Positions 325 to 43,959 are shown, counted from the stretch's first letter. The stretch is DNA of 64,000 nucleotides from Macrostomum hystrix (GCA_950097015.1 CATNEN010000007.1:2666001-2730000), one strand, 5' to 3'. Notes: generated by a model not told the origin, from the sequence alone. Program-made: numbers and translations.

Positions 325-828
325 GACTAGGTTGAATGCGGGATATTTAGGAAACTAGATTGAATGCGGGATATTTAGGAAACTAGATTGAATTTGGGAT
401 ATTTAGGAAACTAGATTGAATTTGGGATATTAAGGGAACTAGATTGAATTTGGGATATTTAGGAAACTAGATTGAATGCGGGATATTTAGGAATATAGAT
501 TGAATTTGGGATATTTAGGAAAATAGATTGAATTTGGGATATTTAGGAAAATATATTGAATTTGGGATATTTAGGAAAATATATTGAATTTGGGATATTT
601 AGGAAAATATATTGAATTTGGGATATTAAGGGAACTAGATTGAATTTGGGATATTTAGGAAACTAGATTGAATGCGGGATATTTAGGAAACTAGATTGAA
701 TGCGGGATATTTAGGAAACTAGATTGAATTTGGGATATTTAGGAAACTAGATTGAATGTAGGATATTAAGGGAACTAGATTGAATGTAGGATATTTAGGA
801 AACTAGATTGAATGTGGGATATTTATTG
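325..828. repeat. 28-bp tandem minisatellite (ACTAGATTGAAT(GC/TT)GGGATATTTAGGAA)
   Basis: About 18 near-identical units read directly. Confidence 0.95.
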
Positions 829-2172: not shown

Positions 2173-3520
2173 TTATGTTATATTATTCTGATTCGAAACA
2201 ATTAGGTTATTCAAAACATTATTAGGGTTTGCATAGATAGTAATTGTACAATTATTCCTATTTGTATACGATACCAGAGGATAGACGGTATTTACTTTTT
2301 CATTTTCATTTTCATTTTCATTTTCGTTTTCATTTTCATTGTTTTCTGAAATTACATTTCGATCTATTTCATTAAGCTGATTTTGAATCTTTTGACTCAG
2401 TTCTTTAACTCCTAAGTCACTTGTTTTCTGCCAAAGATCGATACAAACGACATCGAAAAGCGCCATCAGAAACCGGCTACCGTCCGTCTCCTGCCAGCGG
2501 CTTGCATATCCGTACTGACTGCTGTAGATGGCGGAGCAGTTAGACAGATCCTGGGGCAGGTAGGCTCCGTCTCGTCCATTGCTCAGCACAGGGTTGGATT
2601 GCTTATCACTCCACTCCGAGGTGCCCCTACAAGCAGAATAGAACACCACAACCTGGTCGGCTTTTCCACTAAGAGGCCACACAATGTCGCGCAGTTTCAC
2701 AACGTCCCCTGGAGCTGTCAAGAAGCCATTCTTATCGCCATGAGATGAGACAAACAGAAAGATTTTTTCCTTAATAGAGTCCCTTGGCAGTCCCTCAATG
2801 GCGTCTTTCACGAACTGGACAACTCCCGCCTCTGGGCGATCGGTAGCTGGATACTCAAACAGCAACTGGCATCCGAAGGCTTCGCTGACACGTCTGATGT
2901 AGTATCGGTCATTCTCGTATCCCTCGGTACAAGCCCTGGTGTCGTTTCCGTTCGCATTCTCGATAACGATGGATATTGATATGTAACCAGTAGTTTTGGG
3001 CTGAACCCTTGGCCATTGGTCTGAAAGATTTGATGGGTTTTATAGGCAAAGAACTGATTATAAGTTCTGTCTTGTTATTCCAAGTTCTTAAACTTGGACG
3101 CGCAGGACCTACCTTCTCTTATGTTGTCAATCTGCGAATCGAGATCTTCTTTATTTTGCACTGGCCAATCTCTGTGGGATTTAAAACGTTGATAGAAGAT
3201 AAATTTCCTTCTAATGTGATAATCGAAAATACTTTAGAAATTACTCACGATTTCCTGCGCAGATCCGGACTGCCGTCACTGTGAACTGGGACTGGTGGAA
3301 GTCCGAGGTCATTGTGCTCGGTGAGCAAATCACCCAGTGCCATGGGTGCGGGCTCGGACTTCTGACGCTGAAGTCTCTGGCCGCCGTGCTGGCGATCCGG
3401 GCTCTGCGCTTCCGTCTCTGCGTCAACGCGACCGAGTCGCTGTCCCCCGGAGTCCAGGGGTTGGGCCGCCCCCTCGGAACTTACGTCGTCCAAGAGGGCG
3501 GCCCCGATGCATTCCTTTAT
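2173..3520 (-). CDS. Caspase-like protease 1 (C14), multi-exon, 5' end unresolved
   Basis: Contains FLFVSSHG and VVFYSACRG (catalytic His/Cys). Predicted exons ~3520-3249, 3210-3113 and 3020-2173, with GT-AG introns 3248-3211 (phase 2) and 3112-3021 (phase 1) that keep the frame. An (NE)n tract comes from a TTTTCA microsatellite near 2300-2340. Confidence 0.8.
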
Positions 3521-4759
3521 TTGTAGGTTAAGTAGTTGGTTTTGTTCTGGAGAGTATGTGTTGCTCATTCTCTCGTTACTGCCTGAGTTTCAAATTGCTT
3601 TCTAATATAGCATTGTGGGCCAGGCTTGTGGGCAGAATGGAGTTGGAATCGATTTGCTGTACTTCCCGGACTGTTGTACACTCTACCATCGCTGTACAGT
3701 CGAATGCCCTGTTATTGTGCTCGCTTTCAGATAGAGCTATTACCTATAGATTTGCTAAGAGTTGTCACTTCTCCATTGTCTCTCATTGTGCTTGTTGGTT
3801 TTGCGCGCCCTCTGACTGCACTTCTGGTTGGCTCGCTCTTCGTATCTCTTTCCTCGCTCCTCATTTCCTCTCTTACCCAACCCGTCCTGGCCCGTTCTGC
3901 AAAAGTACAGAGTTGTTGGCAGAAAGGTGGGATGAGCAAACACTCTGTGAGCTGTCACCATGGAAACGGGTATCCAAGGGAGTGACTTTCGAGAGTTTCA
4001 GTTTTGAACTACATGCAGCCAATTTTAAATTTCTGGCATCAAATCCCGACACTTTGTTTGTGACAGATTTGGTTGTTTGTTTTCAACCAGTTTCGACAAA
4101 CTACGATTAAAATTATTCGACAGTTTGCATACATTTCCAACAAACAGTCGATCAGTTCTAACAAGTGCCTAACAACTGTCGTTAGAAAATCAAACTGACG
4201 TCCACAATTCCACCCCGCGTTTTATGTACTGAACATTCTACTACTAAGAGTAGGAAGTAAAACCTTCTTGAGAATTCTAAGGGGCAGTTGCAAAAAACAC
4301 GACAAACTCAACAAACTCAAAAAACAAGCCGCTTGTCTTGATTTTCGTCTTGACTGTTACGGACGATAACAACAAACATAAAAAATAAGAAAAAGTAATA
4401 ATAAAGTACAATAAAATGAAAGTTTCTCTATCTTTCTGATATAAACACTCGGCATATTGCACCAAAAATTGTACTTACCAAGATCTGTTTGTCATCAATA
4501 TTGCTACAAATGAAGTAAAGCATATTACAAATGAAATGAAATATTGCTACAAATGTTGACAAACATTTCATTGTTTTTCCAGTAGCTTTGTTTGTTTGAT
4601 CGCATTAAAAATGGCATCGGACTGGACTATCGGGAAATGCAGTACCGAAAGTCACCGAAGTCCGATGCTATCAACGAAGCTTTCGATACTTCGATAGCAA
4701 CAAGGTGCAGACAAAGAATGCATTGGGTAAATTTTTTGGCAAACAGCCAAAACATCAGC

Positions 4760-7436
4760 TTACGAATGTGAGTTCATGGCAAAATGAATCTGCACGAATG
4801 ACTTGACTTGCGTCTTCTGACATTTGAAAACTCCATTGCCAGTAATATTTCGCATCTCCACTTGCACCCTTTCAGCCAGTCTAATGAACTTCTCTGGATC
4901 GTTCAAGTCATCTGGCGCAAAGTCCTGCAAGGCGTCTCTAAGAGCTCGTAGCAACAGGCCGCCAGTTTCCGCGCTCGAGTAGCTGGCGTATCCGGGGCAG
5001 CTGGCGAAGATTGCCGAGCAGTCGGGCACGTTCTGGGGCAGCGAACTGCCAACGCTGTCTGCAATAGGAAAGCTGAAGCCTTCTAACTCGGTGCTGAGAG
5101 TGTGAACGTCCACATAGTGTCGTCTGGTGCCTCGGCAGGACTGATAAAACACTTTGACACTAGCCGCAAAGTTTTTGAGCTCTTGGACCAACTGCGAAAG
5201 CTGCTCGTTCCGTCCATCAGATAGAACGAATCCCTTTGGGGTGCCGTGCGCAGAAATGCAGAGGTACAATTGAGCAATGTCCTCTTGCTGACTACGAGAT
5301 CGTATCCTAGTAATCAGTGAACCGATGTCGGATTTTACAACGTAGCCGTTATTGGTACGAGCCGTACAATAGAGGTTGTTTTCATTACGAGTACAGCCAA
5401 GCATTCTAGCGATTTCAGTAAAATTATCTGCGTCTTTCTCGCAGCCTGGTCTGTTCTCAAGGTCCAGTCCTGACCGACTGTAGTCTTGTACAAACACGCC
5501 CACGGCAACCGAAATTTTCGGGTGCAATTCCAAGCTTCTTGGCAGCAGATTTCCATTTTCCAGAGGCGAACCGCCCGGCAACTCAGCTGCTGTCACAACT
5601 GGAAGATCCACAAGCCTTCGAAAGCTTACAGACAGGCCTCTTGGCAGACCATTCACCCGTGTCTGCTGGAGACCTCGGCGCTGCAGCTCGATAAGGAATT
5701 CGTGAGTTGATGGCTGAGTTGTCCGGTCATATACGAAACGAATAAGACCACACAGGTGATTGGGCAGATCACGCCATAAATCGCGCACAGCATTGAATCG
5801 GTACACCATCAGGCCGCTTAAATGCGAACTATCTCTGTTCCATATATCATTTAGGGCCTGCGAGCTGTACCTGGCAGTAAAAGAGGGGTGATTCAAACGA
5901 CTTTACAACACTGATTAGCTGCCTCAAGGGAAAAGGCTTGAGGACTTGTGCACTTTACGACCATGAGGGCCAACCCTCAAGGCCACAGTGAGACGTAAAT
6001 GTACACTGATGTCAGGAAGATGTACACAACCAGTGTGTCAGCGCACGCGTCAGTGTGCATGTCTTTTCGGTCAGCAAAATGGACAGAATTGTCTCTTTGC
6101 TGGCTGCGGGTCGTTTTTCGCAAAATAATGCATCTGATTCCACAGCCTACTGCAATTACCACACTGAAGCACTTCGAAGCAATAAATATGCATTCTCATG
6201 ATGACAAAAAATTCAGAAGCACTCACCGCGAAGCATTCTCGCTTTTCAGCAACTCAATTCGAAAAACGAGCAGAAAGAATTCAACATAGAACAGATCGTG
6301 TCGCCGATTTCTCGGAATGCAGCTGTAAAGGTCGCTCTCTCGCACCCTTGTACCGCCCAACAGCGGCGTGTCCTGCGCATCAGCTAGCAGGCCAAGCAGC
6401 AGCCATCTGGTGCTGGAAGAATTTGCTGCAAATAAGTAGGTTTCCACTGCAGCTCGGTACTCCTCCATGCTGCTGATCGGAGCTGCTGCTATTCTGATCC
6501 TCCCAGGGAGAAGAATATTCGCGACTTCCCTGAATGGACTGAGAACAAGCATCTGCAGATTGACAAGATTGTCGGCAACCTCGTTGACTGGAACTATTCC
6601 GCTGGTTAGCGCCTGAGGTTGATGTCGTTCTGAAATAAAAAATAATTTTGTAGTCGGTACTTCATTACTTGGATGCTTTATATTTTTAGGCGCGTCTGAG
6701 AAACTGTCTGGCTCCAAGATTTGTATGGTGCTTATGGCAATGATATTACGAGTAATTATGAGGCTGTAGCTAAATGAACCCATAATGTGTCATAGGACAT
6801 AAGATGAAGGGATGGGTTAGCGAACTCAAATATGCCGCCTCCAATTTGCAGGAGGGCTGTGGGCGATGGCACACCATTTGGTGACAATAGACCTGCAGCC
6901 AGCGAGGAGTCAATTCTGCCCATTTCGCTGACTTTTGAGCACACACGCACACAGATACCGCATGCAGGAACACGCTCACACAGAGTAGTGTACATCTGCC
7001 CTGACTTTCTCATCGTCTCATCATCAAGTTGGAGGTTGGCCCTCATAGGCGTAATTTGCACGAAAAACCCCCAAGCCTTCTCTGCGTGGCTGCGCTCTAA
7101 ATGAATGTGGCCTCGCCGCGGAATCGAGCTCAGGGACCTTGGTGAGAGACGCATTCTTGAAAACGCGTGAACACTTTGCCACTCAACCCCATGCCACCTC
7201 TCACGAAGGTGCCAAAAATATCATGTACAATTTGTTTTGTCTCTAAGATACTCATAGCAGATTAAGATCCGAATATTTAAAGCTCATAAATGCGCCATGC
7301 TTGAAATATTAAACTGACCTTGCAGCTCCAGCTGTGGAGTGATGCTGGCGCCACCCACAGAATCAGCGGCGCCGTCCTGAGCTCTTTGCCGACCATCAGG
7401 CAGCTCATCCCGGTCCTGGTTGCCTGAATGCTTCAT
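4760..7436 (-). CDS. Caspase-like protease 2 (~553 aa), pseudocaspase + caspase architecture
   Basis: Exons 7436-7319, 6629-6227 and 5900-4760 (phases 1 and 2; 1662 nt in total). Motifs ISAHG, FYQSCRG, SAIFASCPGYASY. Confidence 0.85.
5931..6155 (+). mobile_element. 5'-truncated SINE copy in intron 2 of caspase-like 2
   Basis: Body matches the family (aaggcttgagg...gggccaaccctcaagg...aaatggacagaatt...gctggctgcgggtc...ccacagcc). Confidence 0.65.
6840..7160 (-). mobile_element. SINE copy in intron 1 of caspase-like 2
   Basis: ttgcaggagggctgtgggc...gcagccagcgaggagtcaattctgcc...gtggcctcgccgcggaatcgagctcagggaccttggtg. Confidence 0.85.
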
Positions 7437-7965
7437 TTCGCTGCAATGCTTCTCAAATTTTTTCTCTCTTTGCTTCGAACAGAAATCGATTCTGCTGCAA
7501 AAATAATTACGAAGAAAGATAAAGTAAGAAGAATTTTCGTGTTTCAGTGCTTTAAAGAGCAAAATGTTTTGTACCTTAGCTACAATGTACGCGGCAGCAA
7601 AGTCAGCAAGTGTACTTGGAGCTCTGTCTATATCAGTGTAGCATTCAACATAACAGAAATTCAATGACTGTACACTTAAGCCCGACTCCTCTAATCTACA
7701 GAAACTGCACTAGCTACAGCAGAGGAAGGTTCAGTCTTGACTGACTCAAAGTATAAGACCGTACAGTTGTACAGACCGTACTCATAGTTTTGCATTGTCC
7801 TCGAGCTCATTGCTGCAACCAGTGTATTTTTTCGGACTCTAAGTGGAATTAAAAGGACGTCTGTAAGAAGAAAACTATATAAATGGTGAGAGCGAAGGGA
7901 AAGCCACAATTACAATGCACTATAATGCTTTAAGCTCAGTATGCAAAAGTGTAACTTGCACACTC

Positions 7966-10429
7966 TTATGGAAGATGCACAATGAACTGGATCTGTAATA
8001 TTGCCACTTTTTTCTCCTGAAGTGTAACGCGCCCATCATTAGTAAGAGCTCGCATCACTGCTTGAACTTTCTCAGCCAGCTCCCTAAAGTTCTCTGGATT
8101 GGTCAGGTCAAATTCAAATGGAAAGCTCTCCACTGCGATGCTGAGAGCGTGCAGCAGCCAGCCGCCAGTCTCTGCGCTTGAGTAGCTGGCGTATCCGGGA
8201 CAGCTGGCGAAGATTGCAGAGCAGGAGCAGTCGGGCCAGGTCTGTGGCAGCGAGCTTCCGACACCGCTTTGATTGGTTAGGCTCAAGCCGTCCAGCTCGG
8301 TGCATATCTCATCCAGGTGATTGTTGTCGCCCCGGCATGGTTGGTAAAAGACTGTCACGTGACTCGCTATCGTCTTCAGTGACAGCACTAGTTCAGAAAG
8401 CGGCACAGTCCGTCCGTCGGAAGTGATGAAGCCACCCGGCTCACCGTGTGCCGATATGAACAGATAAACTTGTTTAAATGGAATCCTCAAGGTCCTAATA
8501 AGACTCTCTCGAAATAGTTCATAGTTATTAATTGTAATAGAACCAGTGCTCTGATTGAAGAGCATGTAAGTATCTTTGAGTGAGCAGCCAAGCAGGCGTG
8601 ATATTTTCTTGCAGTGCTCTAGGTCCGCTTTGCAGCCCGGTCTGTCAGCTAGTTGGCGTCCGGTGCGGTTGTAGGTCTGCACAAACACTCCCACCGCCAA
8701 CAGGTCGCGTCTAGCAGGTGCGTCTAGTATCTGGGGATATGTGGCCAGCCTACTGTCCTCTGTGGAAGCTGAGTTAATTGGCAAACCTCTGGGCAGCGCC
8801 GTAACCAGCAGATACTGCAGGCCGAAACTCGACAGCTGGTCCAACACGAAGTCGTCCAGGTCAGCCGGGTCGGTTGGCATTATTGATATTGTGGAGGCCA
8901 GGGCTAGAAGATGATCATTCAGGTGCGCCCAGTCAACAGTCCAAGGAATTCCGAATCGATGCACCTCCAGGCCGCTCAGTCCTGAAACGCTGCTCCACTC
9001 TGCACGCCTGTCAACAAGTGGATATAGTTATATTTGTTCTTCAGTTATTCATGATATTTTTTCGTGACAATTTTACGCATTGAATAAAGCAACGTTTCTT
9101 TAAAGACGCTGGGTGGTCTCGTGTGCCGGTTTCTGGGTTACATGATGAGCCTCATCTTATTAAGGCTAAGTGGCAGGGGTTTACCTGTCGCACCAAGGTC
9201 CCTGAGCTCGATTCCGCGGCGACGTCACTTTAGTTTGGGGCGCAGCAATGGAGAAAATACTCGGGGCTTGTCGTTCAATTTATGCCCGGCCGACTTACAA
9301 GGGACTGAGAGTGTGAGCTCACTGTAGAGGGCAGATGTAAACAATGTCTGAGTGTGGTCTGCATAAATTTTATGTGCCCATCTGTGCTCAGGAGTCAGCG
9401 GAGTGAATGAAATTGCCTGTCGCTGGCTGCAGGTCTGCTGTCACCACATTTATGTGCCATTGCCCACAGCCCGCAGACATGTTATTATTATGACGAACCT
9501 CACAGGAAGTAGCGTGGCAGGAGACGCTCTGCTTGGTAATTGACGGCCGAGCTGAAAGATTCTGACTCCGGCCAGGCCGCTTTGATTGGTCGCAGGGATG
9601 CAGTTGTACAGGTCGGTCTCTCGCACCCGGCCTCCCATGACCGGCCACCCATCGCAGTCTATCAGCAGGACATGCAGCAGCCACCTACTGCCGGAATGGC
9701 TGGCAACACTGAGACCTTCGATAACAGCGGACTGGTAGTCCGCGAGGCTGGCGATGCGTCTCAGTTCAACCGTGGCGGTACGGACCAGTGGAAATCGGAT
9801 CCGAGTCCTCTGAAATGCTGGACTCAGTACTAGCACCTGCAGACTGACTGCGCTGGATGAAGCCTCGCTGATTGGGAATGTGCCAGTGCTCAGCTGTTGA
9901 ACCTCAAACATCTCTGCAATGGGAGCACGATGTGGATCCTCATGAGAAAGCTCATAAATGTGGAAACCCATGAGATTTCTGATTTTCTGAAACTGAATCA
10001 ATGGGTAAGAAGCTTTCTAATGTGACTTTTTTTAATAATTCGTTTATTTAGCTTATAGACTGGCCAGTTTTGCACACTTTCCGGGAATACAAACAAATTT
10101 TTTATTTCCTCTATGTTTCTTAAGTCTGATTTGCGTTTTCCAGCCGCTATTTTAGCGAATGCTCAACTCATCTCAATGCTCAATCGAATCTTAATACAAC
10201 AGTATTAATGGCAGCTTTGACATGATCACATAGCAACAATGTCATTGCGATAATCTAATTTAGCAAAAACTAATCTGAATGGTTGGACCGCAAGCTCACC
10301 TGTTTGTTCCAACTCCAGTGGAGTGACATTGCTGATTTCCTGATCAGCAGTGGAGCTCGGACTTCTCTGCCGCCCTCCGGTCGCGCCCGCCGTCAGCTTC
10401 TCCTGGTCCGGCTTGTTCGGATGACTCAT
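7966..10429 (-). CDS. Caspase-like protease 3 (~528 aa), pseudocaspase + caspase architecture
   Basis: Exons 10429-10300, 9913-9499 and 9007-7966, with the same intron phases (1, 2) as gene 2. Motifs ISAHG, FYQPCRG, linker ICTELDG, SAIFASCPGYASY. Confidence 0.85.
9165..9492 (+). mobile_element. SINE copy in intron 2 of caspase-like 3
   Basis: Head ...cgcaccaaggtccctgagctcgattccgcggcga, a body matching the family, and a (TTA)n tail at ~9481-9491. Confidence 0.8.
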
Positions 10430-11221
10430 TGCAGCGCGCTACTGATGCCGTCTACAATGACCAGCGAGTGTCTTGCTCTTTTCCTAAGTTTCAAATGTAG
10501 TCTCTCATACATTGGAATAAATACATGCCCGTCAGTTGTTAAAAATAACAATTGCCGATGTACATCGCACTGAGCTGTGGAGACAAAAAAAATTGTTGCT
10601 TTTGTGACCGCAATTTGGTTTTGGTGTACACTTGACCAGACATATCTGGACAGACAGAAAAAAGAAAAAATCTTAAAGTACTGGTTGAATACCAAGTGCA
10701 TACTCATTGGAGTGCTAATTTCTGCACTAAACGGTGAGTCACTGCAAGCTAAGTACACAAGTCGAGTACGCAAAAGAGAAGTTTGAATCAGGTGTAAAGC
10801 AGTATTTTGATTGTTAGTTTTATATATGCGCTGATATTTTTAGATTTGTCACTGCATCATAAATGTACTCATAATATACCTAATAAAGAAAAGTAAAAAA
10901 CTGTTGCTTTGATAAAGCAGCTTGCGGAATAAATGTTTCACGTATTTTTGCACACAGCGACATTAGAATCGACTAGAAGGGCAAGAAGAATTGCAGCGAA
11001 AAATTCCAAAGTTTTTTTACTAACGGTAAACAAAAAATGCTCAGGGGAAAATGCTGAAATTATCAGCTATTGAAGACAAGTTTCAGATATCCTTTTTTAA
11101 TTCGAAGGACAAAAGGACAGAAGGACTGCGGATGCAATCATGACATTGGTATAACGATATGTACAGTGATGCACTTATGTTTATGTTTATGTATGTGCAT
11201 TTATGTTTATACGCTTGCGAA

Positions 11222-11392
11222 AGAGCAACAATAAGAAACAACAGGAAACAACAACGAACAACAAACAAAAACAACAAACAAAAAATAACAACAAACAACA
11301 AAAAACAAGAACAAACAAAAAACAACAAAAAACAACAACAAACAAGAACAAACGACAACAAAAAACAACAAACAACAACAAAAAACAACAAA
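11222..11392. repeat. AAC/AACA-rich low-complexity microsatellite
   Basis: Read directly. It produces the spurious K/N/Q/T-rich and F/L/V/C-rich ORFs here. Confidence 0.9.
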
Positions 11393-11626
11393 GGACTGCT
11401 CCCACAGCCGTGCAGTGGCCAAAAAGGAGGGAAGAGTCAGAGAGCGCGTCTATGGGTCAGCGACATAATTGAGGCGAACGTGCGCTGTGTCTCTGTCCTT
11501 AGCGATGCCGTGCAGGTTAAACATTTGATGAATTAGTAAAAATAAAATGCTGATAAGCTTATACACGTGGCGACATTGCAGGGATTTCGCGTTTGTCAGC
11601 AAGGTGGTTAATAAAATCGTAAGTTC

Positions 11627-13560
11627 TCATTCCTGCTCTCTAGACTTGCAGGGGATGAGCTGGCTCAGCTCTGCCAACGTCGCCTGAGGGCACAGCTGAT
11701 GGGAGACAGTCGACCCACCCCCACCGCGTTCGGTGGCTTCACTTCTGCGCATCAGGCCCGTATCGACGGTGAGGTCCTCGCAGCCCTCATTCACAATGTA
11801 CTGAATCTGGATGTAGCAGGTGTAGGATGACTCGCGGTTTCTTTGGCATTTTAGAAGGCCGTCGGTGAACTGCTCTGATAGCTTCGCCTGCACCAACTCC
11901 GCCAGCTGCGGAACGCTGATGTTCCTTCTGGCTCTCACGACATCTTGCAGAGCCCAAAGCATCCAGCTGCCTTTTTTCTCGTTCCGATACGCCTCGTAGC
12001 CAGCCATGCTGCCAAAGATTGCTGCCATCCTCGGCTTCCTTGACGGCAGGACGCAGCCGGCGATGTCGGGACTCGCGAAGCCCAGGTCTTCGACGAATGG
12101 CAAGCCGTCACGATCGCCTACCTGTGCAGGGTGATGGCCTTTACCTCGACATGCCTGGTAGAGCAGCAGAACGGAGCCGCCGAGGGGCTCCAGTAAGTGC
12201 GCGACCTCCTGCACAGGTAATTTCTTATCGTCTGATGTGTGAATCCCAGCCTGACTGCCGTGCGCCGAGACTACAACGAAGACCCATTTAGGCGAGATAT
12301 TTTTTTTATTGCACGATTCCACGACCATTTCGATGTGATCACGGATGCTGTGCTCTGACACAGTACCATCGTCGGGACACAGAATGTACGTATTCTCCGA
12401 GCTGCAACCCATTTGTTCGGAAATTACGTAGACTGCTTGCTTATCTTCTAAAACTCCGTGACGAATGTTCTTTGGGTACATCCGAATAATGATTGAGATG
12501 CAAACATTTGGGGCCGGCAAATCGATCTCATCAGACGACTTACTACTGAGTAACTGGAGTTTGCTCAGGGCATCCTCTTCGCTTTCACACTCTGGGATCG
12601 TGGGCACGTCCGGAGTGGAATTAGTGGAAGCTTTGCAGAGCTCTGCGCGTGGGATGCCGGAAACCCGCCGGAATCTGGCTCCGGAACAGCAGCCCACAAT
12701 CTGCTGCCGCATTTCGTTAATCGACACCTTCGTTCCGTTCATCTCTAGGCTACTGAAAGCGCGCTGTACTTCCTGCCAGTTGACATCGATGCTCGCGAAG
12801 TCGATGCTCAAGACGTCGCAGCCGCTTAGCGGTGCACGAAGCGGTGTGTCATACTCGTGGTCGCTAAAGCCTTTTCTAGCACTGTTTTTGTCTCTGTAGG
12901 GTCCGAGGCACTGGCATCTCAGATAAATGACGCCAATTTTTTGTCCCTCCAACTCGGTCGAACAGTCCAGTGGTTCGCTGAGCTCAGTCTCCGTCACGAG
13001 TTGTCCATCGATCACAGGCTGCGGAAAGCTTTCGTCTGCAGTGACGTCGATCTCGTGCACGACGAATACTTCATTGCTGCCCCGAGACTTTGCGGAGGAC
13101 AGGAACTGCTTGATTTTCTGTTTGTAGCCTTCAATGGAGTTAGCGTGCTCGATTTGGAACTTGAAGAGACCGTTTTCCGGCTCGACAAATGTGTCCATTT
13201 TGTGGCCTTCTCGAGTGCTGATCAACAGGACAGGTGTAGGAGGAGACGAAATGACTTCTGCTGCCTCGACATCTGGAAGCCTCGCGTGACTCTGCACTTG
13301 GTTGCTTCGCTGGTCAGCATGCTCTGAAAGTTTGGTATGCGATGCGATTCACGTAGGCGGAATTGTAGTGAAAAACACTAAAGTATAATAGTTTATGTAT
13401 GACCTGAAGTATCAAGCTCATTGTCGGGAATCACTGGGGTCTCCAAGATGCTCTGGCTCTCCTGCAATGGAACGCCCTGCGTTGGTCCCAGTGTTGCCTC
13501 GACTTTGGCAGCTTTCATAATTGGCACAATAATGTCAAGCTGACTGGCTGCCACTGACAT
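11627..13560 (-). CDS. Caspase-like protease 4 (~617 aa from ATG 13560), canonical QACRG
   Basis: Exons 13560-13404 and 13323-11627 (80-nt phase-1 intron); further upstream exons are possible. Motifs VVVSAHG, LLYQACRG (12143-12157), GYEAYRNEKKGSWML. Confidence 0.9.
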
Positions 13561-14442
13561 TTTGAAGTCTTCGTTGTCTTTAGCAGTTGAGTCTAGTGTT
13601 GAGTCCACAGGAGTCTACTTGCAATTTTCGTTTTGCTTTTAAACTACCGAAAGGGTAGGTTAAATTCGTAATTGTTATTTTTAGTCCAGCGAAACGTATT
13701 GCGTTACCTACAGCGGCAATGACTAATATACGCGACAAAGCTGTCTTTCTGCATTTAAACAACGCTGTCAAATTTTTTATTATTTTTGGTTCGATGTACT
13801 TGCAGTCAGAAATAGGCAGTTTATTCTGTAAGAAAACTACATTCGTTAAAGACGCCAGTTTGTCATTACTATATATATATATATCACCTGGCAAGAGATT
13901 TGAAAATGGTTTTCATGGCTTTGCGCGGACAATTTGAAAAAGAACTGCAATTGCTTTACAGTGCATTTGACTAATCTTCAACAGGTCAATGAGAAGCTTA
14001 CACTTTAGGCTCAAGCCAAGGATCGATATTTATTTTCAAGTAGGCTGCTTTTATTGAAATGAAAGTTGAGCTGTTTGGCAGACAGAAACAAAAATTACAA
14101 AAAAATATTAAGGCAGACGGACAAAAAGATGATTGGCGAGTTGCAATGACAAGCAAGCAATAAAATATTGCTAATATTCAATTGAGCTGTAGAATGATAT
14201 GATTAAGCTTTACATTTGCAGGTAAATTGCTTTGCTGATGAGAATCGTACCTAATGATATGTTCATAAATATTGTATTGCACAAGCTCTACGAAAAGCGA
14301 ACAACAAACGGTTGGCATCGACTGGCGAATTAAGAACCGATCGCAACATAAAAATAAAGTGATTGCACTATTCTGACTGATTTTTTGTCAATCTGTAGCT
14401 AAAACTCTTCGCGATAAAAGAGAAACTGGAGTCGGTCCGAGT

Positions 14443-16474
14443 TCACTGCGAATTCGGAGGTGCAAGCCGAGTTGAGAACCGGCCAGAGCTGGGCGGGCTG
14501 GCTGTCTGGAACGGATCGATGCGGCCACATCAGATGATTGAGAATGCAATAATAAAATAATAATTATAGTTAAAATATTTGCAGGAGGGCTGTGAGCATA
14601 GCGACAGCAACATCCTTTGGTGACACCATTTGGTAGATCTGCAGCCAGCGAGGAGGCAATGCTGCCCTCCTGAGCACACACGCACACAGGTGTGTACATC
14701 TACCCTGACTTTCTCATCGTCAGGCAGTGTACACTTTCCAGCGTAAATTGCACGACAGGCGCCCCAAATGAATGTGGCCTCGCCGCAGAATCGAGCTCAG
14801 GGACCTTGGTGCGAGAGGCAAACCAGTTAGACCGGTCTGCCAATAACCTCCCAATTCAGGGTGCAAATTTTCCGATCAGAAAAATAATCTAATTTAAAAG
14901 TCTGGTGTCAGACCAGGTAGATTCACCAAACTCACATGCTCCAGTTTCTCTGGGTCTCTGGCAGTTTCGCTGCGGCCCGACATCATGGAAGTGTCGTCCA
15001 GCGGCTCAGGTGACGCCAGCGGTTCCGTCAGTTTGGAGCGCATCCGCTTATTGGCGAACCATTTTTTCACCTGTGAGTAGCTGAGGCCGGTTGCCTGCGC
15101 CAGTGTCTTCGTGTCCTCGGCACCCGGATACGGTCGGTCCCGGTGCTCGACGAACCAGCGCAACAGAAGGTCGTTCTGATTTGTGCTGAAATTCTGCCTC
15201 TGCTGTTGCTGCTGCTCCTGAGACTGCGAAGGCGGCGGCGGCATCAGCGTCTCCTGCTGCCGGGAAGAAGCAGACTGCTTGTTGGTCTTCAGGCTCAAGT
15301 CCAGAGCAGCCTCAGCCTGGGAGAGAACGCATGAATGTGTAAAATCTTCACGAGAAATCACCAGGTTATCCCACTTTCATTATCTGTAAGACCTGTTACT
15401 TATAACTTGGCCATGTCTCACCTGGCAACCAAAGGTGTAGTTGTTACTAATGACACCAAGAACTCCGCAAGGCAGGCTAAATGGCAGCGCCATAGGCTTC
15501 ATCGGTGTGTCGCCAAGGTCGGTCACGTGACTTCGCTTGAGTGCTGGCTGCTGCAACTCTGACGATGAGCAGCAGCCTTTGGGCAGATCTTCAGACGGGA
15601 TTCTCTCCTGAGAATGGTGTTGGAGTTCTTCCAATTCAGCCACGAAATATGCTTAAGAAATAGCGTTGAGTCGCAATCTAACTCCCCGACTCCCACGTAT
15701 ATACAATGAATTAAACTATTTTTTCCTAGATAATACTTAGATCAGGAAGTCAGTAGCGAGTTTAACAAATTCATTTTTGCTCACCGGAATATTCGACTTG
15801 CGCTTCCTCGAACCGGTGGGAGCCGCCTCCGGCGATCGAATGACCTCCTTGGACATCAACTGCACAGAGAGCTCTGCCTGCTGGGGGTCGTTGTCGGTAG
15901 ATTGTGTTTTGTTTTTAATCAATTTAAAGCTTAAACTGCGCTTAACAATCTGCAGTATGAGCTAGTTTCTCAAAGCATCATATAAAAAAGCAGACATATT
16001 TCTGTAAGGCGCACAACCAAATGATTAAGTGCATCACATCAACTCAATTTCAATAAGCGGCTTTTGTAAGAATATATTTTAATTAGTAGAGTGAAACACA
16101 TTGTTCAAAGTACGACAGGCAACTCACACTGTCGCCACCGTGGTAGACGGTCACGTGCTCCAGCATGATGTCGCTCTGGGTGGACGCGGCCAAACAAAGT
16201 CGGCAGCGGTACACAGGCACCTGGTCCAGTGAGTGGCTGCGGTACGCGTGACTGGCCAGCACCTGGGACTGCAGGCTCATAAACGGACAGCGGGGGCAGC
16301 AGAGGACGTGGGTAACGGCTGTTGACAGTGGGACAGCTTGAGTCATTGCTGTGCTTTTGATTTCTGGCTGGTTGCTGAGCTGATAGAAGTGATAGAGCTC
16401 GTAGAAGCTTGGAGTTCCCTTTTTATCCAAATCTTGAGCGGAAGTGGGCACCGAAGGGACACCAAAAGAGTTTG
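14443..16474 (-). CDS. Two C2H2 zinc fingers + TALE-class homeodomain transcription factor (5' exon not resolved)
   Basis: Exons 16474-16128, 15949-15785, 15607-15422, 15316-14936 and a probable last exon 14505-14443, all joined in phase 0 by GTGAG...AG introns. Fingers CPRC...HAYRSH and CRLC...HVTVYH. Homeodomain LLLRWFVEHRDRPYP...QVKKWFANKRMR. Confidence 0.8.
14545..14835 (-). mobile_element. SINE copy in the last predicted intron of the ZF-TALE gene
   Basis: AAT-rich tail, ttgcaggagggctgtg, and head gtggcctcgccgcagaatcgagctcagggaccttggtgcgagaggcaaac. Confidence 0.85.
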
Positions 16475-41512: not shown

Positions 41513-43959
41513 ATGGAAGCCGTTTACTGCTCGCCATTTAAAATTAAATGCTTAGACGAGAGCTGTGTTCATTTATCCACTTTGATTACTACTAATGCCC
41601 AGGCAGCTTGCGATGAGGTCAGCGGTACAAGTTTCGTGGCAGGTGAAGACACACGAACTTCTATGGAATCCTAACGTACCTTCATTTGTTAAACTGGTTC
41701 AGAAAGTCGTTTAGGTGGTTGGATACATGGACTTGTAAATAATAGTTTTAGTAGTCCCCATAGTCACTACTGAATACTTATTTAGTGTTCAGTAGTCCCT
41801 GTGAGGATAGCCAGTTGTACCTGTCTATGAGGTACCGAGGACAGCTTCATGTAAACCAAGTGACGAACGGTTTTTCCTGTACGGGTCACCCTCTACCTGT
41901 CTAACGGGTGATAAGGGCAGCTACATGTCTTACGGGTGATAAGGGCAGCTACCTGTCTAACGGGTGATAAGGGCAGCCACCTGTCTAACGGGTGATAAGG
42001 GCAGCTACCTGTCTAACGGGTGAAAAGGGCAGCTACAAGTCTAACGGGTGATAAGGGCAGCTACCTGTCTTACGGGTGATAAGGGCAGCTACCTGTCTAA
42101 CGGGTGATAAGGGCAGCTACCTGTCTATCGGAAGACAGCTGCCTCTAAGTTGTAGCTGAAATGAACTTCCCAATGATCTCAAGTCCAAGCAAATCATACA
42201 TATGTTTTACCCACTGATGGCTTTCCTCTTACCGCCTTTTATAGACATAACATCCGGCACAGCAGCGGGCGTCAAGTGTCAGAGTGACGAAACTCTGCCA
42301 GCTAGCGAGGGCCTTCCCGCCGGACGACCCGAAGGCCGTCTGGTGGCATTTTTTAGTGTGCACCCGGACATTGAGAAATACAAAGAGCTTGCATGTGAAA
42401 CCAGCAATGTTAAATTCGCACAAACATGCAGCGTTGAAGGCCTACAGATCGAGCAGGAAAACCTGTTCAAGTCTAGAGATCCAAAGGCCATTCGCGAACT
42501 CTGGCTGTTCCACATTTTCATTATTGACAAGGACAATAAGCCGATGATGAGTGGACGGATCGTAACGGAGAATGATATGTACAAACACATATTTTGACAA
42601 GATTTGCAACGAGTCTGCATTTTTCAGCTTGCGCTTCGCGTGGACGTCAAACCAGCGCCATCTTCGAAACGCATTCCAACCGACCGCAAATCAGACGAGG
42701 AGAACGAAAAGCTGAGGCGCTGTTCCACAGGTAGCGGCATACATGTTTACCTATTTAGAGTGGAAAAACCAGACGATTGGAAAACTGTGATTCCAACCGT
42801 TGCGGATGTAGTCATTCGAGCGTCGTCATTGCAGACAGACTTCACTGACAGCAGAGCTGCACAATGGCTGAGCCAATCCCCCCGCCTAACACTCCTGCAA
42901 CAGACTGGTGGTCCGAATGGGCGAGCCATTGATCCACCTGAGTGTCCAGACCTCGTGTACTTGGCTACTCAGCCGCAGTTGAGCACAATCAACAAAAGCA
43001 GGACGCCACCCTTGTGGCGAATGCATTCAACGAGAAGCCTAGTGCAGCCGAATGAGAGCAGTGACCAACTGCAGCAACTTGACGCGAGCTGCGGCGGCAA
43101 TAGGGCGACCGTTGAGAACATTCCTCTTTTGATGCCTCAGTATCACAAGTGCGTCTCAATTAGTATCGTCATTGACGGCTACAAAAGCTCAGTTTACAAG
43201 CAACTACAGGACAGGGAAGGAAGCGCCATCGACGAAAATATAATCCGCGATTTATCACAGATGTTTTGTTGCAAAACTGGCGACATTCATACGAATTGCA
43301 ATGTACACTACGAAACTAAGACTAGCATTGCTGACTTTATCAAGAAAATCACCCATCATTATGGCAATGAAAGCCACCTGGAGACAGTATTTCTTTTTGT
43401 TTCAGCTCATGGCGATGAGAAGGGCCTTCTAACCTCTACTGGCGAAGCGATGCCACTAAAAGATCTCCTGGAGCCGCTGCAGGAGATCGCCCGTCACGTG
43501 CTAATGTTTTACCAGCCATGCAGAGGCAATCGCCAGCACTGCTCAGATGCACCGGAGGAGCCTCAAATTCCAGCGCTCAGCTTTCCTGGAAACAGAATCG
43601 CCGGTTGCTGCTTGCCAAACGGCGGGAAACAGAATGTCTCGGCCATCTTCGCTAGCATGCCTGGTTTTGCCAGTTATAACTGCCCGAAAACTGGTAGCCT
43701 GCTCCTGGCCGCACTGCATGCTGTTTTAACCAGACCTACGATGTGTGGCCAGAAGATTCTACAGAAAGACCTGGCGTGTCTGGTGCAACAGCATCTTGCA
43801 GCGACGTACCCGAACGGACTGCGTCTGCGTGGAATGCCTGCTGGTGATCAGTCACGTCTGTGCCAGGTGCGAGTGCACTATGATGTGCGACAGGAGCACC
43901 CCATCAAAATAGCTGATATTTCGTTTCCAAAAGTCAGTTCTGAAGCTGGGATTTTGTGA
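41513..43959 (+). CDS. Caspase-like protease 5 (pseudocaspase + caspase) with an in-frame TGA at 42595-42597; possible pseudogene or readthrough gene
   Basis: Tentative exon 41513-41642 (phase 1), then 42245-43959. ORFs 42202-42597 and 42604-43959 are in the same frame. Motifs FVSAHGDEKG, FYQPCRG, SAIFASMPGFASY. Confidence 0.75.
41892..42127. repeat. 28-bp tandem repeat (CTACCTGTCTAACGGGTGATAAGGGCAG) in the predicted intron of caspase-like 5
   Basis: About 8 units. Confidence 0.95.

What the first reader, a model, noticed from the sequence alone, without database searches (positions are those of the whole stretch)
4760..13560. Single-chain pseudocaspase-caspase proteins: a hidden dead caspase fold fused N-terminal to an active caspase
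Seen: genes 2, 3, 4 (and 5) share a ~200-aa N-terminal region that does not resemble a CARD or DED by eye but aligns with their own catalytic domain. In gene 4, NEVFVVHEID...GQLVTETELSEPL...IGVIYLRCQ parallels KWVFVVVSAHG...KKLPVQEVAHLLEPL...VLLLYQACRG. A Cys sits at the catalytic-Cys position but His-Gly is lost. The following GCDVLSIDF...WQEVQRAF...VSINEMRQQIV...FRRV parallels the small-subunit strand-helix-helix-strand (ISVPQLAELVQ). Gene 3 has RWLLHVLLIDCDG...RVRETDLY...VRIFQL; gene 2 has RWLLLGLLADAQD...RVRESDLY. Known: caspases work as dimers, and cFLIP/caspase-8 pseudoenzyme heterodimers tune activity. Inference: an internal duplication made a covalent pseudoenzyme-enzyme heterodimer that could self-activate, autoinhibit or sense ligands without an adaptor platform. 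I do not know this architecture among described animal caspases.
Basis: partly seen in the sequence, partly recalled or inferred. Interest (0 to 1): 0.9.

Follow-up and report, generated by a model that had tools for sequence, protein, structure and literature searches.

The report
Flatworm caspases with dead-caspase prodomain
A cluster of Macrostomum-type flatworm caspase genes carries, ahead of the working protease, a roughly 200-residue domain that sequence searches cannot name but that is predicted to fold like a catalytically dead caspase; this design is already published for coral caspase-X and mammalian caspase-16, so it is a new lineage-specific example, not a new kind.

Summary
Genes 2, 3 and 4 (minus strand, 4760-13560) and gene 5 (plus strand, 42160-43959) each join a shared ~200-aa N-terminal domain to a Pfam-confirmed caspase domain with intact SAHG and QxCRG motifs.

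In gene 4 and in M. lignano BOX15_Mlig012038g1 both domains lie in one uninterrupted ORF, so the fusion needs no splicing assumption.

The catalytic His-Gly is gone in all copies. A Cys remains at the catalytic position only in the gene-4 clade. Helix alpha-1 is missing.

The intramolecular pseudo-dimer mechanism is untested. The novelty claim fails: coral caspase-X (2016) and mammalian caspase-16 (2025) have this architecture. I found no paper describing this family, which has been seen only in Macrostomum.

The parts
13404..13560 (-). Gene 4, predicted exon 1 (ATG at 13560-13558; 52 codons plus 1 base)
   Evidence: An ORF with a GT donor at 13403-13402 and an 80-nt intron to the acceptor AG at 13325-13324. 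The phase-1 join keeps the frame. The M. lignano syntenic orthologue P0004 has a similar acidic N-terminal extension. There is no RNA evidence.
11627..13323 (-). Gene 4, main exon: N-domain, linker and caspase domain in one uninterrupted ORF (stop at 11627-11629)
   Evidence: The 618-codon model includes the stop codon.
12641..13237 (-). Gene 4 N-domain (pseudocaspase-like): TPVLLIS ... GIPRAE. Order of elements: b1, b2, a2, b3, a3, b4, long loop, b5, a4, a5, b6; no a1
13043..13054 (-). Gene 4 N-domain EIDV, at the place of the catalytic SAHG (the His position holds Asp)
   Evidence: hhalign register and model secondary structure.
12911..12925 (-). Gene 4 N-domain YLRCQ, at the place of YQACR: a Cys is retained at the catalytic-Cys position
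   Evidence: The Cys is conserved in P0001 and P0004 but not in genes 2, 3 and 5.
11792..12508 (-). Gene 4 caspase domain (NVCISII ... IQIQYIV). SAHG at 12257-12268, QACRG at 12143-12157, P1-binding Arg in AYRNE at 11978-11992
9504..10001 (-). Gene 3 upstream exon: first half of the N-domain (LQVLVLS at 9822-9842, LIDC at 9654-9665, IFQLG at 9546-9560). The 5' end is not determined; a possible ATG is at 9971
   Evidence: N-domain HMM E 4.7e-37; this sequence was used to build the HMM.
7966..9000 (-). Gene 3 downstream exon: second half of the N-domain (to ALPRGL at 8782-8799) plus the caspase domain (8680-7978). SAHG at 8443-8454, QPCRG at 8329-8343
   Evidence: The predicted 503-nt intron runs from 9503 to 9001, GT..AG, phase 0. 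The join is supported by collinearity with the uninterrupted ORFs of gene 4 and P0001. Pfam.
6227..6783 (-). Gene 2 upstream exon: first half of the N-domain (LQMLVLS at 6538-6558, LADA at 6376-6387)
   Evidence: The donor is CG|GTGAGT.
4760..5870 (-). Gene 2 downstream exon: second half of the N-domain (to GLPRGL at 5633-5650) plus the caspase domain (5509-4775). SAHG at 5243-5254, QSCRG at 5129-5143
   Evidence: The predicted 356-nt intron runs from 6226 to 5871, phase 2, frame kept. Pfam E 4.8e-9.
42160..43959 (+). Gene 5: the same N-domain plus caspase architecture in one frame, with an in-frame TGA at 42595-42597 inside the N-domain. SAHG at 43402-43413, QPCRG at 43513-43527
   Evidence: N-domain HMM hit E 1.2e-6 on ORF 42160-42594; gene 5 was not used to build that HMM. 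Sequence. Pfam.
2176..3039 (-). Gene 1: a neighbouring caspase paralogue with a complete catalytic domain (SSHG, SACRG) and no detectable N-domain
   Evidence: Its M. lignano orthologue (39% identity) lies next to P0004.

Best explanation
Genes 2, 3, 4 and 5 belong to a caspase family seen only in Macrostomum. Their prodomain is a strongly degenerated caspase-like (clan CD) domain that has lost the His-Gly of the dyad and helix alpha-1. It is followed by a ~45-100 residue flexible linker and a catalytically competent caspase domain.

Shown:
- The fusion lies in one ORF.
- The N-domains of the family members are homologous to each other.
- The catalytic motifs of the C-domain are intact.
- The N-domain has a predicted caspase-like fold.
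- The N-domain has been kept across a deep species divergence.

Inferred:
- The N-domain descends from a caspase domain, by an old internal or paralogue duplication.
- It works as a built-in cFLIP-like partner. It would pair with the catalytic domain, within one chain or between two chains, through the alpha5/beta6 face. The protease would then be regulated without a CARD or DED adaptor platform.
- By analogy with coral caspase-X, the default effect would be restraint of activity, relieved by linker cleavage or by a ligand.
For: One-ORF fusion:
- Gene 4 ORF 11627-13297.
- M. lignano P0001, a single 1629-nt exon.

Family homology of the N-domain:
- Alignments.
- An independent HMM hit on gene 5, E 1.2e-6.
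- Exhaustive phmmer finds only the M. lignano proteins P0001 (E 1.7e-23) and P0002 (E 4.7e-16).

Fold:
- AlphaFold2 model of the N-domain alone from a 6-sequence alignment without templates: pLDDT 71.8, pTM 0.77.
- The same secondary-structure order appears in the independent full-length run.
- Foldseek against the PDB: the top 50 hits are all caspases or the paracaspase MALT1; best is procaspase-1 3e4c_A, E 3.5e-5, TM 0.48.

Sequence echo:
- hhalign of the N-profile against the C-profile: local 26.2 (P 0.0046), global 17.0 (P 0.0027).
- No column-permuted control reached these scores (0 of 200). The alignment is in the structural register and includes the caspase 'DG..V...EL' hairpin/alpha3 motif.

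Constraint:
- Gene 4 and P0004 are syntenic orthologues. Both lie between a TALE homeobox gene and the gene-1-type caspase.
- They share 34% identity in the N-domain and 47% in the C-domain. The neighbouring TALE protein's exons are only 44-60% identical.

Mechanism analogy:
- Caspase-X and caspase-16.
Against: - No sequence method places the N-domain in PF00656, and no PDB sequence hit exists.
- The structural Z (about 10) is half that of the true catalytic domain (19.5). It is only 2-3 units above generic three-layer alpha/beta folds.
- TM-scores are below 0.5.
- The model rests on a 6-sequence alignment, and the b5-b6 half has pLDDT of only about 55-78.
- Helix alpha-1 is absent.
- The reversed-profile control reached a local hhalign score of 21.3, so part of the profile signal is generic strand/helix patterning.
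- Nothing tests inter-domain packing, and the full-length pTM is 0.46.
- There is no RNA or protein evidence for this species. All three word-based searches found nothing encoded by the window.
- Gene 5 carries an in-frame stop.
Confidence: 0.7

Rival explanations
1. The N-domain is a generic Rossmann-like alpha/beta domain of separate origin. It only superficially resembles a caspase, and it serves as an ordinary protein-interaction or ligand-binding prodomain.
For: - No Pfam or PDB sequence hit.
- The alignment behind the model is shallow, and alpha-1 is absent.
Against: - All of Foldseek's top 50 hits and the top 16 VIA hits are clan CD peptidases, over 165-190 aligned residues spanning the whole domain.
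- The profile-profile alignment to the family's own caspase domain exceeds all 200 permuted controls and lies in the structural register.
- The caspase DG..V..EL motif is retained.
Confidence: 0.2
2. The N-domain is caspase-derived but acts between molecules. N-domains, or an N-domain and a C-domain of different chains, dimerise and bring catalytic domains together. The domain would then be an adaptor-free activation module like a death fold, not an intramolecular inhibitor.
For: - Initiator caspases are activated by induced proximity (established knowledge).
- The caspase-16 authors raise the same alternative.
- The intersubunit linker of P0004 has no Asp, so that protein cannot be activated by cleavage at an Asp in this linker.
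Against: - In coral caspase-X, removing the first domain increased killing, which points to inhibition.
- A 45-100 residue linker would allow intramolecular pairing.
- There are no data here either way.
Confidence: 0.3
3. The fusion is an artefact: the N-terminal ORFs belong to separate genes, or the loci are decaying pseudogenes.
For: - The joins in genes 2 and 3 are predicted only from GT..AG sites and frame.
- Gene 5 has an in-frame TGA.
- No transcript or protein from this genome was found.
Against: - Gene 4 and M. lignano P0001 carry both domains in one uninterrupted ORF.
- In genes 2 and 3 the N-domain itself spans the intron and stays collinear with gene 4.
- All catalytic motifs are intact.
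- Orthologues are conserved across species in synteny.
Confidence: 0.04

Closest known systems
Acropora caspase-X (CASc*-CASc; Moya et al. 2016, PMC4715348)
   Same: One polypeptide carries an N-terminal caspase-like domain lacking the catalytic His/Cys and a typical active C-terminal caspase domain. The family is lineage-specific and multi-copy. It was proposed to form a cFLIP/caspase-8-like beta6-beta6 pair.
   Different: The first domain of caspase-X is recognisable as CASc by sequence. The flatworm N-domain is invisible to Pfam, lacks alpha-1, and keeps a Cys at the catalytic position in one clade. phmmer finds no sequence relationship, so an independent origin is likely. Functional data exist for caspase-X (N-deletion is more toxic) and none exist here.
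Mammalian caspase-16 (Eckhart et al. 2025, PMC12198278)
   Same: The prodomain is a duplicated caspase domain that has lost the dyad, and the catalytic domain is C-terminal. An intramolecular pseudo-dimer was proposed.
   Different: In CASP16 the duplication is still visible by BLAST and by exon structure. Here each domain is encoded without matching exon boundaries, and gene 4 and P0001 are essentially single-exon. The similarity is seen only at fold and profile level. The phylum is different and there is no orthology.
cFLIP-L / procaspase-8 heterodimer
   Different: cFLIP-L is a separate protein recruited through DEDs. Here the two domains are covalently linked and there is no death fold.
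Flatworm caspases with unusual prodomains (ANK caspases; the M. lignano kinase-caspase; PMC11463336)
   Same: They come from the same phylum and genus and show the same trend of replacing CARD/DED with other domains.
   Different: That survey reports no other unexpected prodomain in platyhelminths. The present prodomain is caspase-like, not ankyrin or kinase.
Separase (clan CD, C50): a pseudo-protease domain next to the active protease domain
   Different: It belongs to a different family (C50), is a very large protein, and is regulated by securin. There is no relationship beyond the clan-level fold.

Membership tests
Caspase family C14A (Pfam PF00656), C-terminal domain | Profile match above Pfam's gathering score | tested here: met
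   Gene 4 scores 49.4 bits, gene 2 36.7, gene 3 24.6, gene 5 27.6 and gene 1 21.9, against a cutoff of 21.4.
Caspase family C14A (Pfam PF00656), C-terminal domain | Catalytic dyad in the S(A/S)HG and Q(A/P/S)CRG motifs | tested here: met
   Present in genes 1-5 and in P0001 and P0004.
Caspase family C14A (Pfam PF00656), C-terminal domain | P1-Asp pocket arginines (caspase-3 R64 and R207 equivalents) and Gln161 | tested here: inconclusive
   The R64 and Q161 equivalents are present in all copies. The R207 equivalent is present in gene 4, P0001 and P0004 (AYRNE). It is replaced by Ser in genes 2 and 3 (ASYSS) and by Asn in gene 5 (ASYNC). In gene 1 it is shifted (SRW). This comes from alignment by eye to the caspase-3 GYYSWRN motif recalled from knowledge.
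Caspase family C14A (Pfam PF00656), C-terminal domain | Caspase fold | tested here: met
Pseudocaspase (caspase-like domain without a dyad), N-terminal domain | Caspase/hemoglobinase fold | tested here: met
Pseudocaspase (caspase-like domain without a dyad), N-terminal domain | Loss of at least one catalytic residue | tested here: met
   The His-Gly position holds Asp/Glu followed by Val, Thr, Cys, Ala or Lys in all seven sequences. Cys is kept only in gene 4, P0001, P0004 and P0002.
Pseudocaspase (caspase-like domain without a dyad), N-terminal domain | Sequence-profile membership in PF00656 | tested here: not met
   No hit at E up to 10 for six N-domain sequences, and no PDB profile hit. The only signal is a pairwise profile-profile alignment at P about 0.003-0.005.
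Tandem CASc*-CASc caspases (caspase-X / caspase-16 type) | Inactive N-terminal and active C-terminal caspase-like domains in one polypeptide | tested here: met
   Uninterrupted ORFs in gene 4 and P0001.
Tandem CASc*-CASc caspases (caspase-X / caspase-16 type) | Intramolecular pairing through alpha5/beta6 | not testable with these tools
   No coordinates or PAE are returned, and the full-length pTM is 0.46.
Tandem CASc*-CASc caspases (caspase-X / caspase-16 type) | Common descent with caspase-X or caspase-16 | tested here: not met
   Exhaustive phmmer with the N-domain against 1.84 billion proteins finds only Macrostomum proteins and one spurious bacterial repeat protein. The shared architecture is best read as convergent.

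The most novel reading that the evidence does not exclude
Macrostomum flatworms independently evolved a covalent cFLIP-like pseudo-dimer caspase, a third origin after corals and mammals. The dead domain has drifted beyond sequence recognition but still gates the active one, giving adaptor-free, single-chain caspases. In the gene 2/3/5 branch the P1-binding Arg is replaced, so these proteases may no longer be Asp-specific.
Probability: 0.3. Interest if true: 0.6.

Novelty: new member of a known kind. Interest (0 to 1): 0.45.

Why it matters
If confirmed, this would be a third, apparently independent appearance of a single-chain pseudocaspase-caspase, after coral caspase-X and mammalian caspase-16. 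Recurrence would suggest that building the regulatory partner into the chain is a repeated solution when death-fold adaptors are lost. Platyhelminths lack FADD and DED caspases according to PMC11463336.

It also shows that sequence-based surveys of caspase prodomains miss such domains. The 2024 lophotrochozoan survey lists no further unusual prodomain in platyhelminths, and the M. lignano members are annotated only as hypothetical or uncharacterised proteins with a caspase p20 domain.

Macrostomum lignano is a transgenic-capable model (my own knowledge, not checked here). N-deletion and linker-cleavage tests should therefore be feasible there, unlike for caspase-16, which is a pseudogene in human and mouse.

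Tried and rejected
- BLASTP of gene 4's N-half against its C-half gave nothing (E at least 1.2).
- hhalign with 3- and 6-sequence profiles was not significant (P 0.16 and 0.13). It became weakly significant only after gene 5 was added.
- Pfam at E up to 10 and a PDB profile search gave only chance hits: a mini-intein, CHMP1a and annexin.
- Word-based protein searches with gene 4 and with gene 2's exon 2 found nothing. The search with P0001 found only P0001 and P0004.
- P0003, the third phmmer hit, is a 2649-aa bacterial repeat protein matched through 8 short repeats. I rejected it as spurious.
- Supplying the exon pieces of genes 2 and 3 as separate rows misaligned them (A2, A5, A6). The exon-2 pieces were therefore left out of the alignment used to fold the N-domain (A7).
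- A 49-nt intron that would remove gene 5's TGA was considered and rejected. It breaks the frame and would delete the conserved beta4 strand.
- Searching the full-length model for a chain spanning both domains, such as separase, found only single-domain matches.
- phmmer of gene 4's catalytic domain against PDB sequences found nothing at 1e-3. The whole family is very divergent.
- No N-domain was found upstream of gene 1 or upstream of its M. lignano orthologue.


Full report
**What is there**

The window is eukaryotic. Earlier notes of this scan call it a Macrostomum-type flatworm, and I found its closest relatives in M. lignano.

On the minus strand, four caspase genes lie head to tail downstream of a TALE homeobox gene:
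- Gene 4: 13560-11627
- Gene 3: about 10001-7966
- Gene 2: about 6783-4760
- Gene 1: 3039-2176

A fifth caspase gene lies on the plus strand at 42160-43959.

**Gene models**

Gene 4's N-terminal region, linker and caspase domain lie in one ORF of 556 codons. A short upstream exon (13560-13404) can be joined in frame across an 80-nt GT..AG intron.

Genes 2 and 3 each need one intron, of 356 nt and 503 nt. Both have GT..AG ends and keep the frame. The intron falls inside the N-terminal domain. The joined proteins stay collinear with gene 4 across the junction, which supports the joins without RNA data.

M. lignano BOX15_Mlig012038g1 (P0001, 542 aa) carries the same two domains in a single 1629-nt exon. 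The fusion is therefore not a splicing artefact. I found no transcript evidence for this genome.

**The N-terminal domain is a real, conserved family**

An HMM built from genes 2, 3 and 4 and the M. lignano proteins finds gene 5's copy, which was not in the HMM, at E 1.2e-6.

Exhaustive phmmer against 1.84 billion representative proteins finds only two M. lignano proteins (E 1.7e-23 and 4.7e-16) and one spurious bacterial repeat protein. A word-based search adds BOX15_Mlig001330g1 (P0004, 615 aa).

P0004 is the syntenic orthologue of gene 4. In M. lignano the order is TALE homeobox, P0004, then a caspase that is 39% identical to gene 1. In the window the order is TALE, gene 4, gene 3, gene 2, gene 1.

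The two species are distant, since the TALE protein's exons are only 44-60% identical. Even so, the N-domain keeps 34-36% identity against 47% for the catalytic domain. Both domains show the same clade structure: gene 4 with P0001 and P0004, gene 2 with gene 3, and gene 5 apart. This points to an old fusion kept under purifying selection.

**Is the N-domain a caspase-like fold?**

Sequence methods alone say no:
- No Pfam hit at E up to 10.
- No PDB profile hit.
- BLASTP of the N-half against the C-half is at chance level.

The AlphaFold2 model of the N-domain alone used a 6-sequence alignment and no templates. It has pLDDT 71.8 and pTM 0.77. Its element order is b1, b2, a2, b3, a short hairpin, a3, b4, a long loop, b5, a4, a5, b6. 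This is the caspase order minus helix a1. The independent full-length run gave the same elements.

Structural searches point to caspases:
- Foldseek against the PDB returns only caspases and the paracaspase MALT1 in its top 50. The best hit is procaspase-1, E 3.5e-5, TM 0.48.
- Clostripain, MALT1, legumain and a CHAT protease follow at 8.0-8.5. The first fold outside clan CD scores 7.8.

With gene 5 added to the N-domain profile, hhalign against the family's catalytic-domain profile gives a local score of 26.2 (P 0.0046, 138 columns) and a global score of 17.0 (P 0.0027). Column-permuted controls (n = 200) gave:
- Local: mean 13.1, sd 2.3, maximum 19.8.
- Global: mean 3.2, sd 2.2, maximum 10.1.

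A reversed profile reached local 21.3 over 29 columns and global 1.3. The best-kept motif is the caspase 'DG..V...EL' hairpin/alpha3 segment: IDGQLVTETELSEPL against SDDKKLPVQEVAHLLEPL in gene 4, and MGGRVRETDLY against SDGRTVPLSELV in gene 3.

**Catalytic positions of the N-domain**

In the hhalign and structural register, the His-Gly position holds Asp (Glu in P0001) followed by Val, Thr, Cys, Ala or Lys in all seven sequences. The catalytic-Cys position keeps Cys in gene 4, P0001, P0004 and P0002. It holds Gly in gene 3, Val in gene 2 and Ala in gene 5. The N-domain is therefore predicted to be inactive.

**Mechanism**

Nothing here tests how the two domains interact. The tools return neither coordinates nor inter-domain confidence, and the full-length pTM is 0.46.

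By analogy I favour a built-in cFLIP-like partner that pairs with the catalytic domain through alpha5/beta6. In coral caspase-X, removing the first domain increased cell killing, and a model placed the two domains in a cFLIP/caspase-8-like beta6-beta6 pair. The caspase-16 authors propose the same pairing and also the intermolecular alternative.

I put about 0.7 on 'caspase-derived dead domain fused to an active caspase'. I put about 0.4 on intramolecular pairing as the mode of action.

**Novelty**

- Acropora caspase-X (2016; PMC4715348).
- Mammalian caspase-16 (2025; PMC12198278).
- Mytilus caspases with two CASc domains (PMC10967218).

What is new is the lineage and the degree of degeneration. 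The 2024 survey of lophotrochozoan caspases reports ANK caspases and one kinase-caspase, and 'no other' unexpected prodomain in platyhelminths. The M. lignano members are annotated only as hypothetical or uncharacterised proteins. phmmer shows no link to caspase-X or caspase-16, so the origin is probably independent. I class it as a new member of a known kind.

**Limits**

- The fold assignment rests on a model from a shallow alignment.
- The second half of the domain is less confident.
- The 5' ends of genes 2 and 3 are undetermined.
- No expression data for this species were available.

Noticed in passing
window 42595-42597 (+): Gene 5 has an in-frame TGA inside its N-domain, between ...DMYKHIF and QDLQRVCIFQL..., while the rest of the 1.8-kb frame is open and the catalytic motifs are intact. 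It could be a young pseudogene, an allele or an assembly error. A bridging intron does not fit.
   Followed up: partly
window 8173-8187, 4970-4984 (-) and 43672-43686 (+): The Arg that binds the P1 aspartate (the caspase-3 R207 equivalent in GYxSWR) is Ser in genes 2 and 3 (ASYSS) and Asn in gene 5 (ASYNC). It is kept in gene 4, P0001 and P0004 (AYRNE). Gene 1 and its M. lignano orthologue have SRW. Substrate specificity may differ within the cluster.
   Followed up: partly
window 2176-16474 (-); L003 621-13328: Synteny with M. lignano is conserved: TALE homeobox, then the gene-4 orthologue, then the gene-1 orthologue. Genes 2 and 3 are extra in this genome. They share 72-81% nucleotide identity over about 180 nt of the small-subunit region (4919-5094 against 8122-8303).
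   Followed up: partly
P0004 (L003 6001-8539), intersubunit linker: The linker between the large and small subunits of M. lignano P0004 contains no Asp at all. Gene 4 has several candidate sites (FVED/L, GDRD/G) and an SDEID/L site just before the catalytic domain. Activation by linker cleavage may not be general in this family.
   Followed up: no
L001 10001-11629: M. lignano P0001 is a single-exon gene nested, on the opposite strand, inside the called range of an inositol-trisphosphate/ryanodine-receptor-type gene (2914 aa).
   Followed up: no
window 7066-7147 and 9188-9269: There is an 82-nt inverted repeat, 80% complementary. One arm lies upstream of gene 2 and the other inside gene 3's intron. 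These are probably two copies of a short interspersed element.
   Followed up: no
window 326-825, 1331-1821, 11227-11392: There are minisatellites of period 28 (18 copies) and period 40 (12 copies), and an AAC-rich microsatellite just downstream of gene 4. They produce long spurious ORFs on both strands.
   Followed up: no
window 12641-12658, 8782-8799, 5633-5650 (-): The best-conserved motif of the second half of the N-domain is G(I/L/V)P(R/K)(A/G), right after the predicted beta6 at the start of the linker. It has no counterpart in ordinary caspases and its role is unknown.
   Followed up: no
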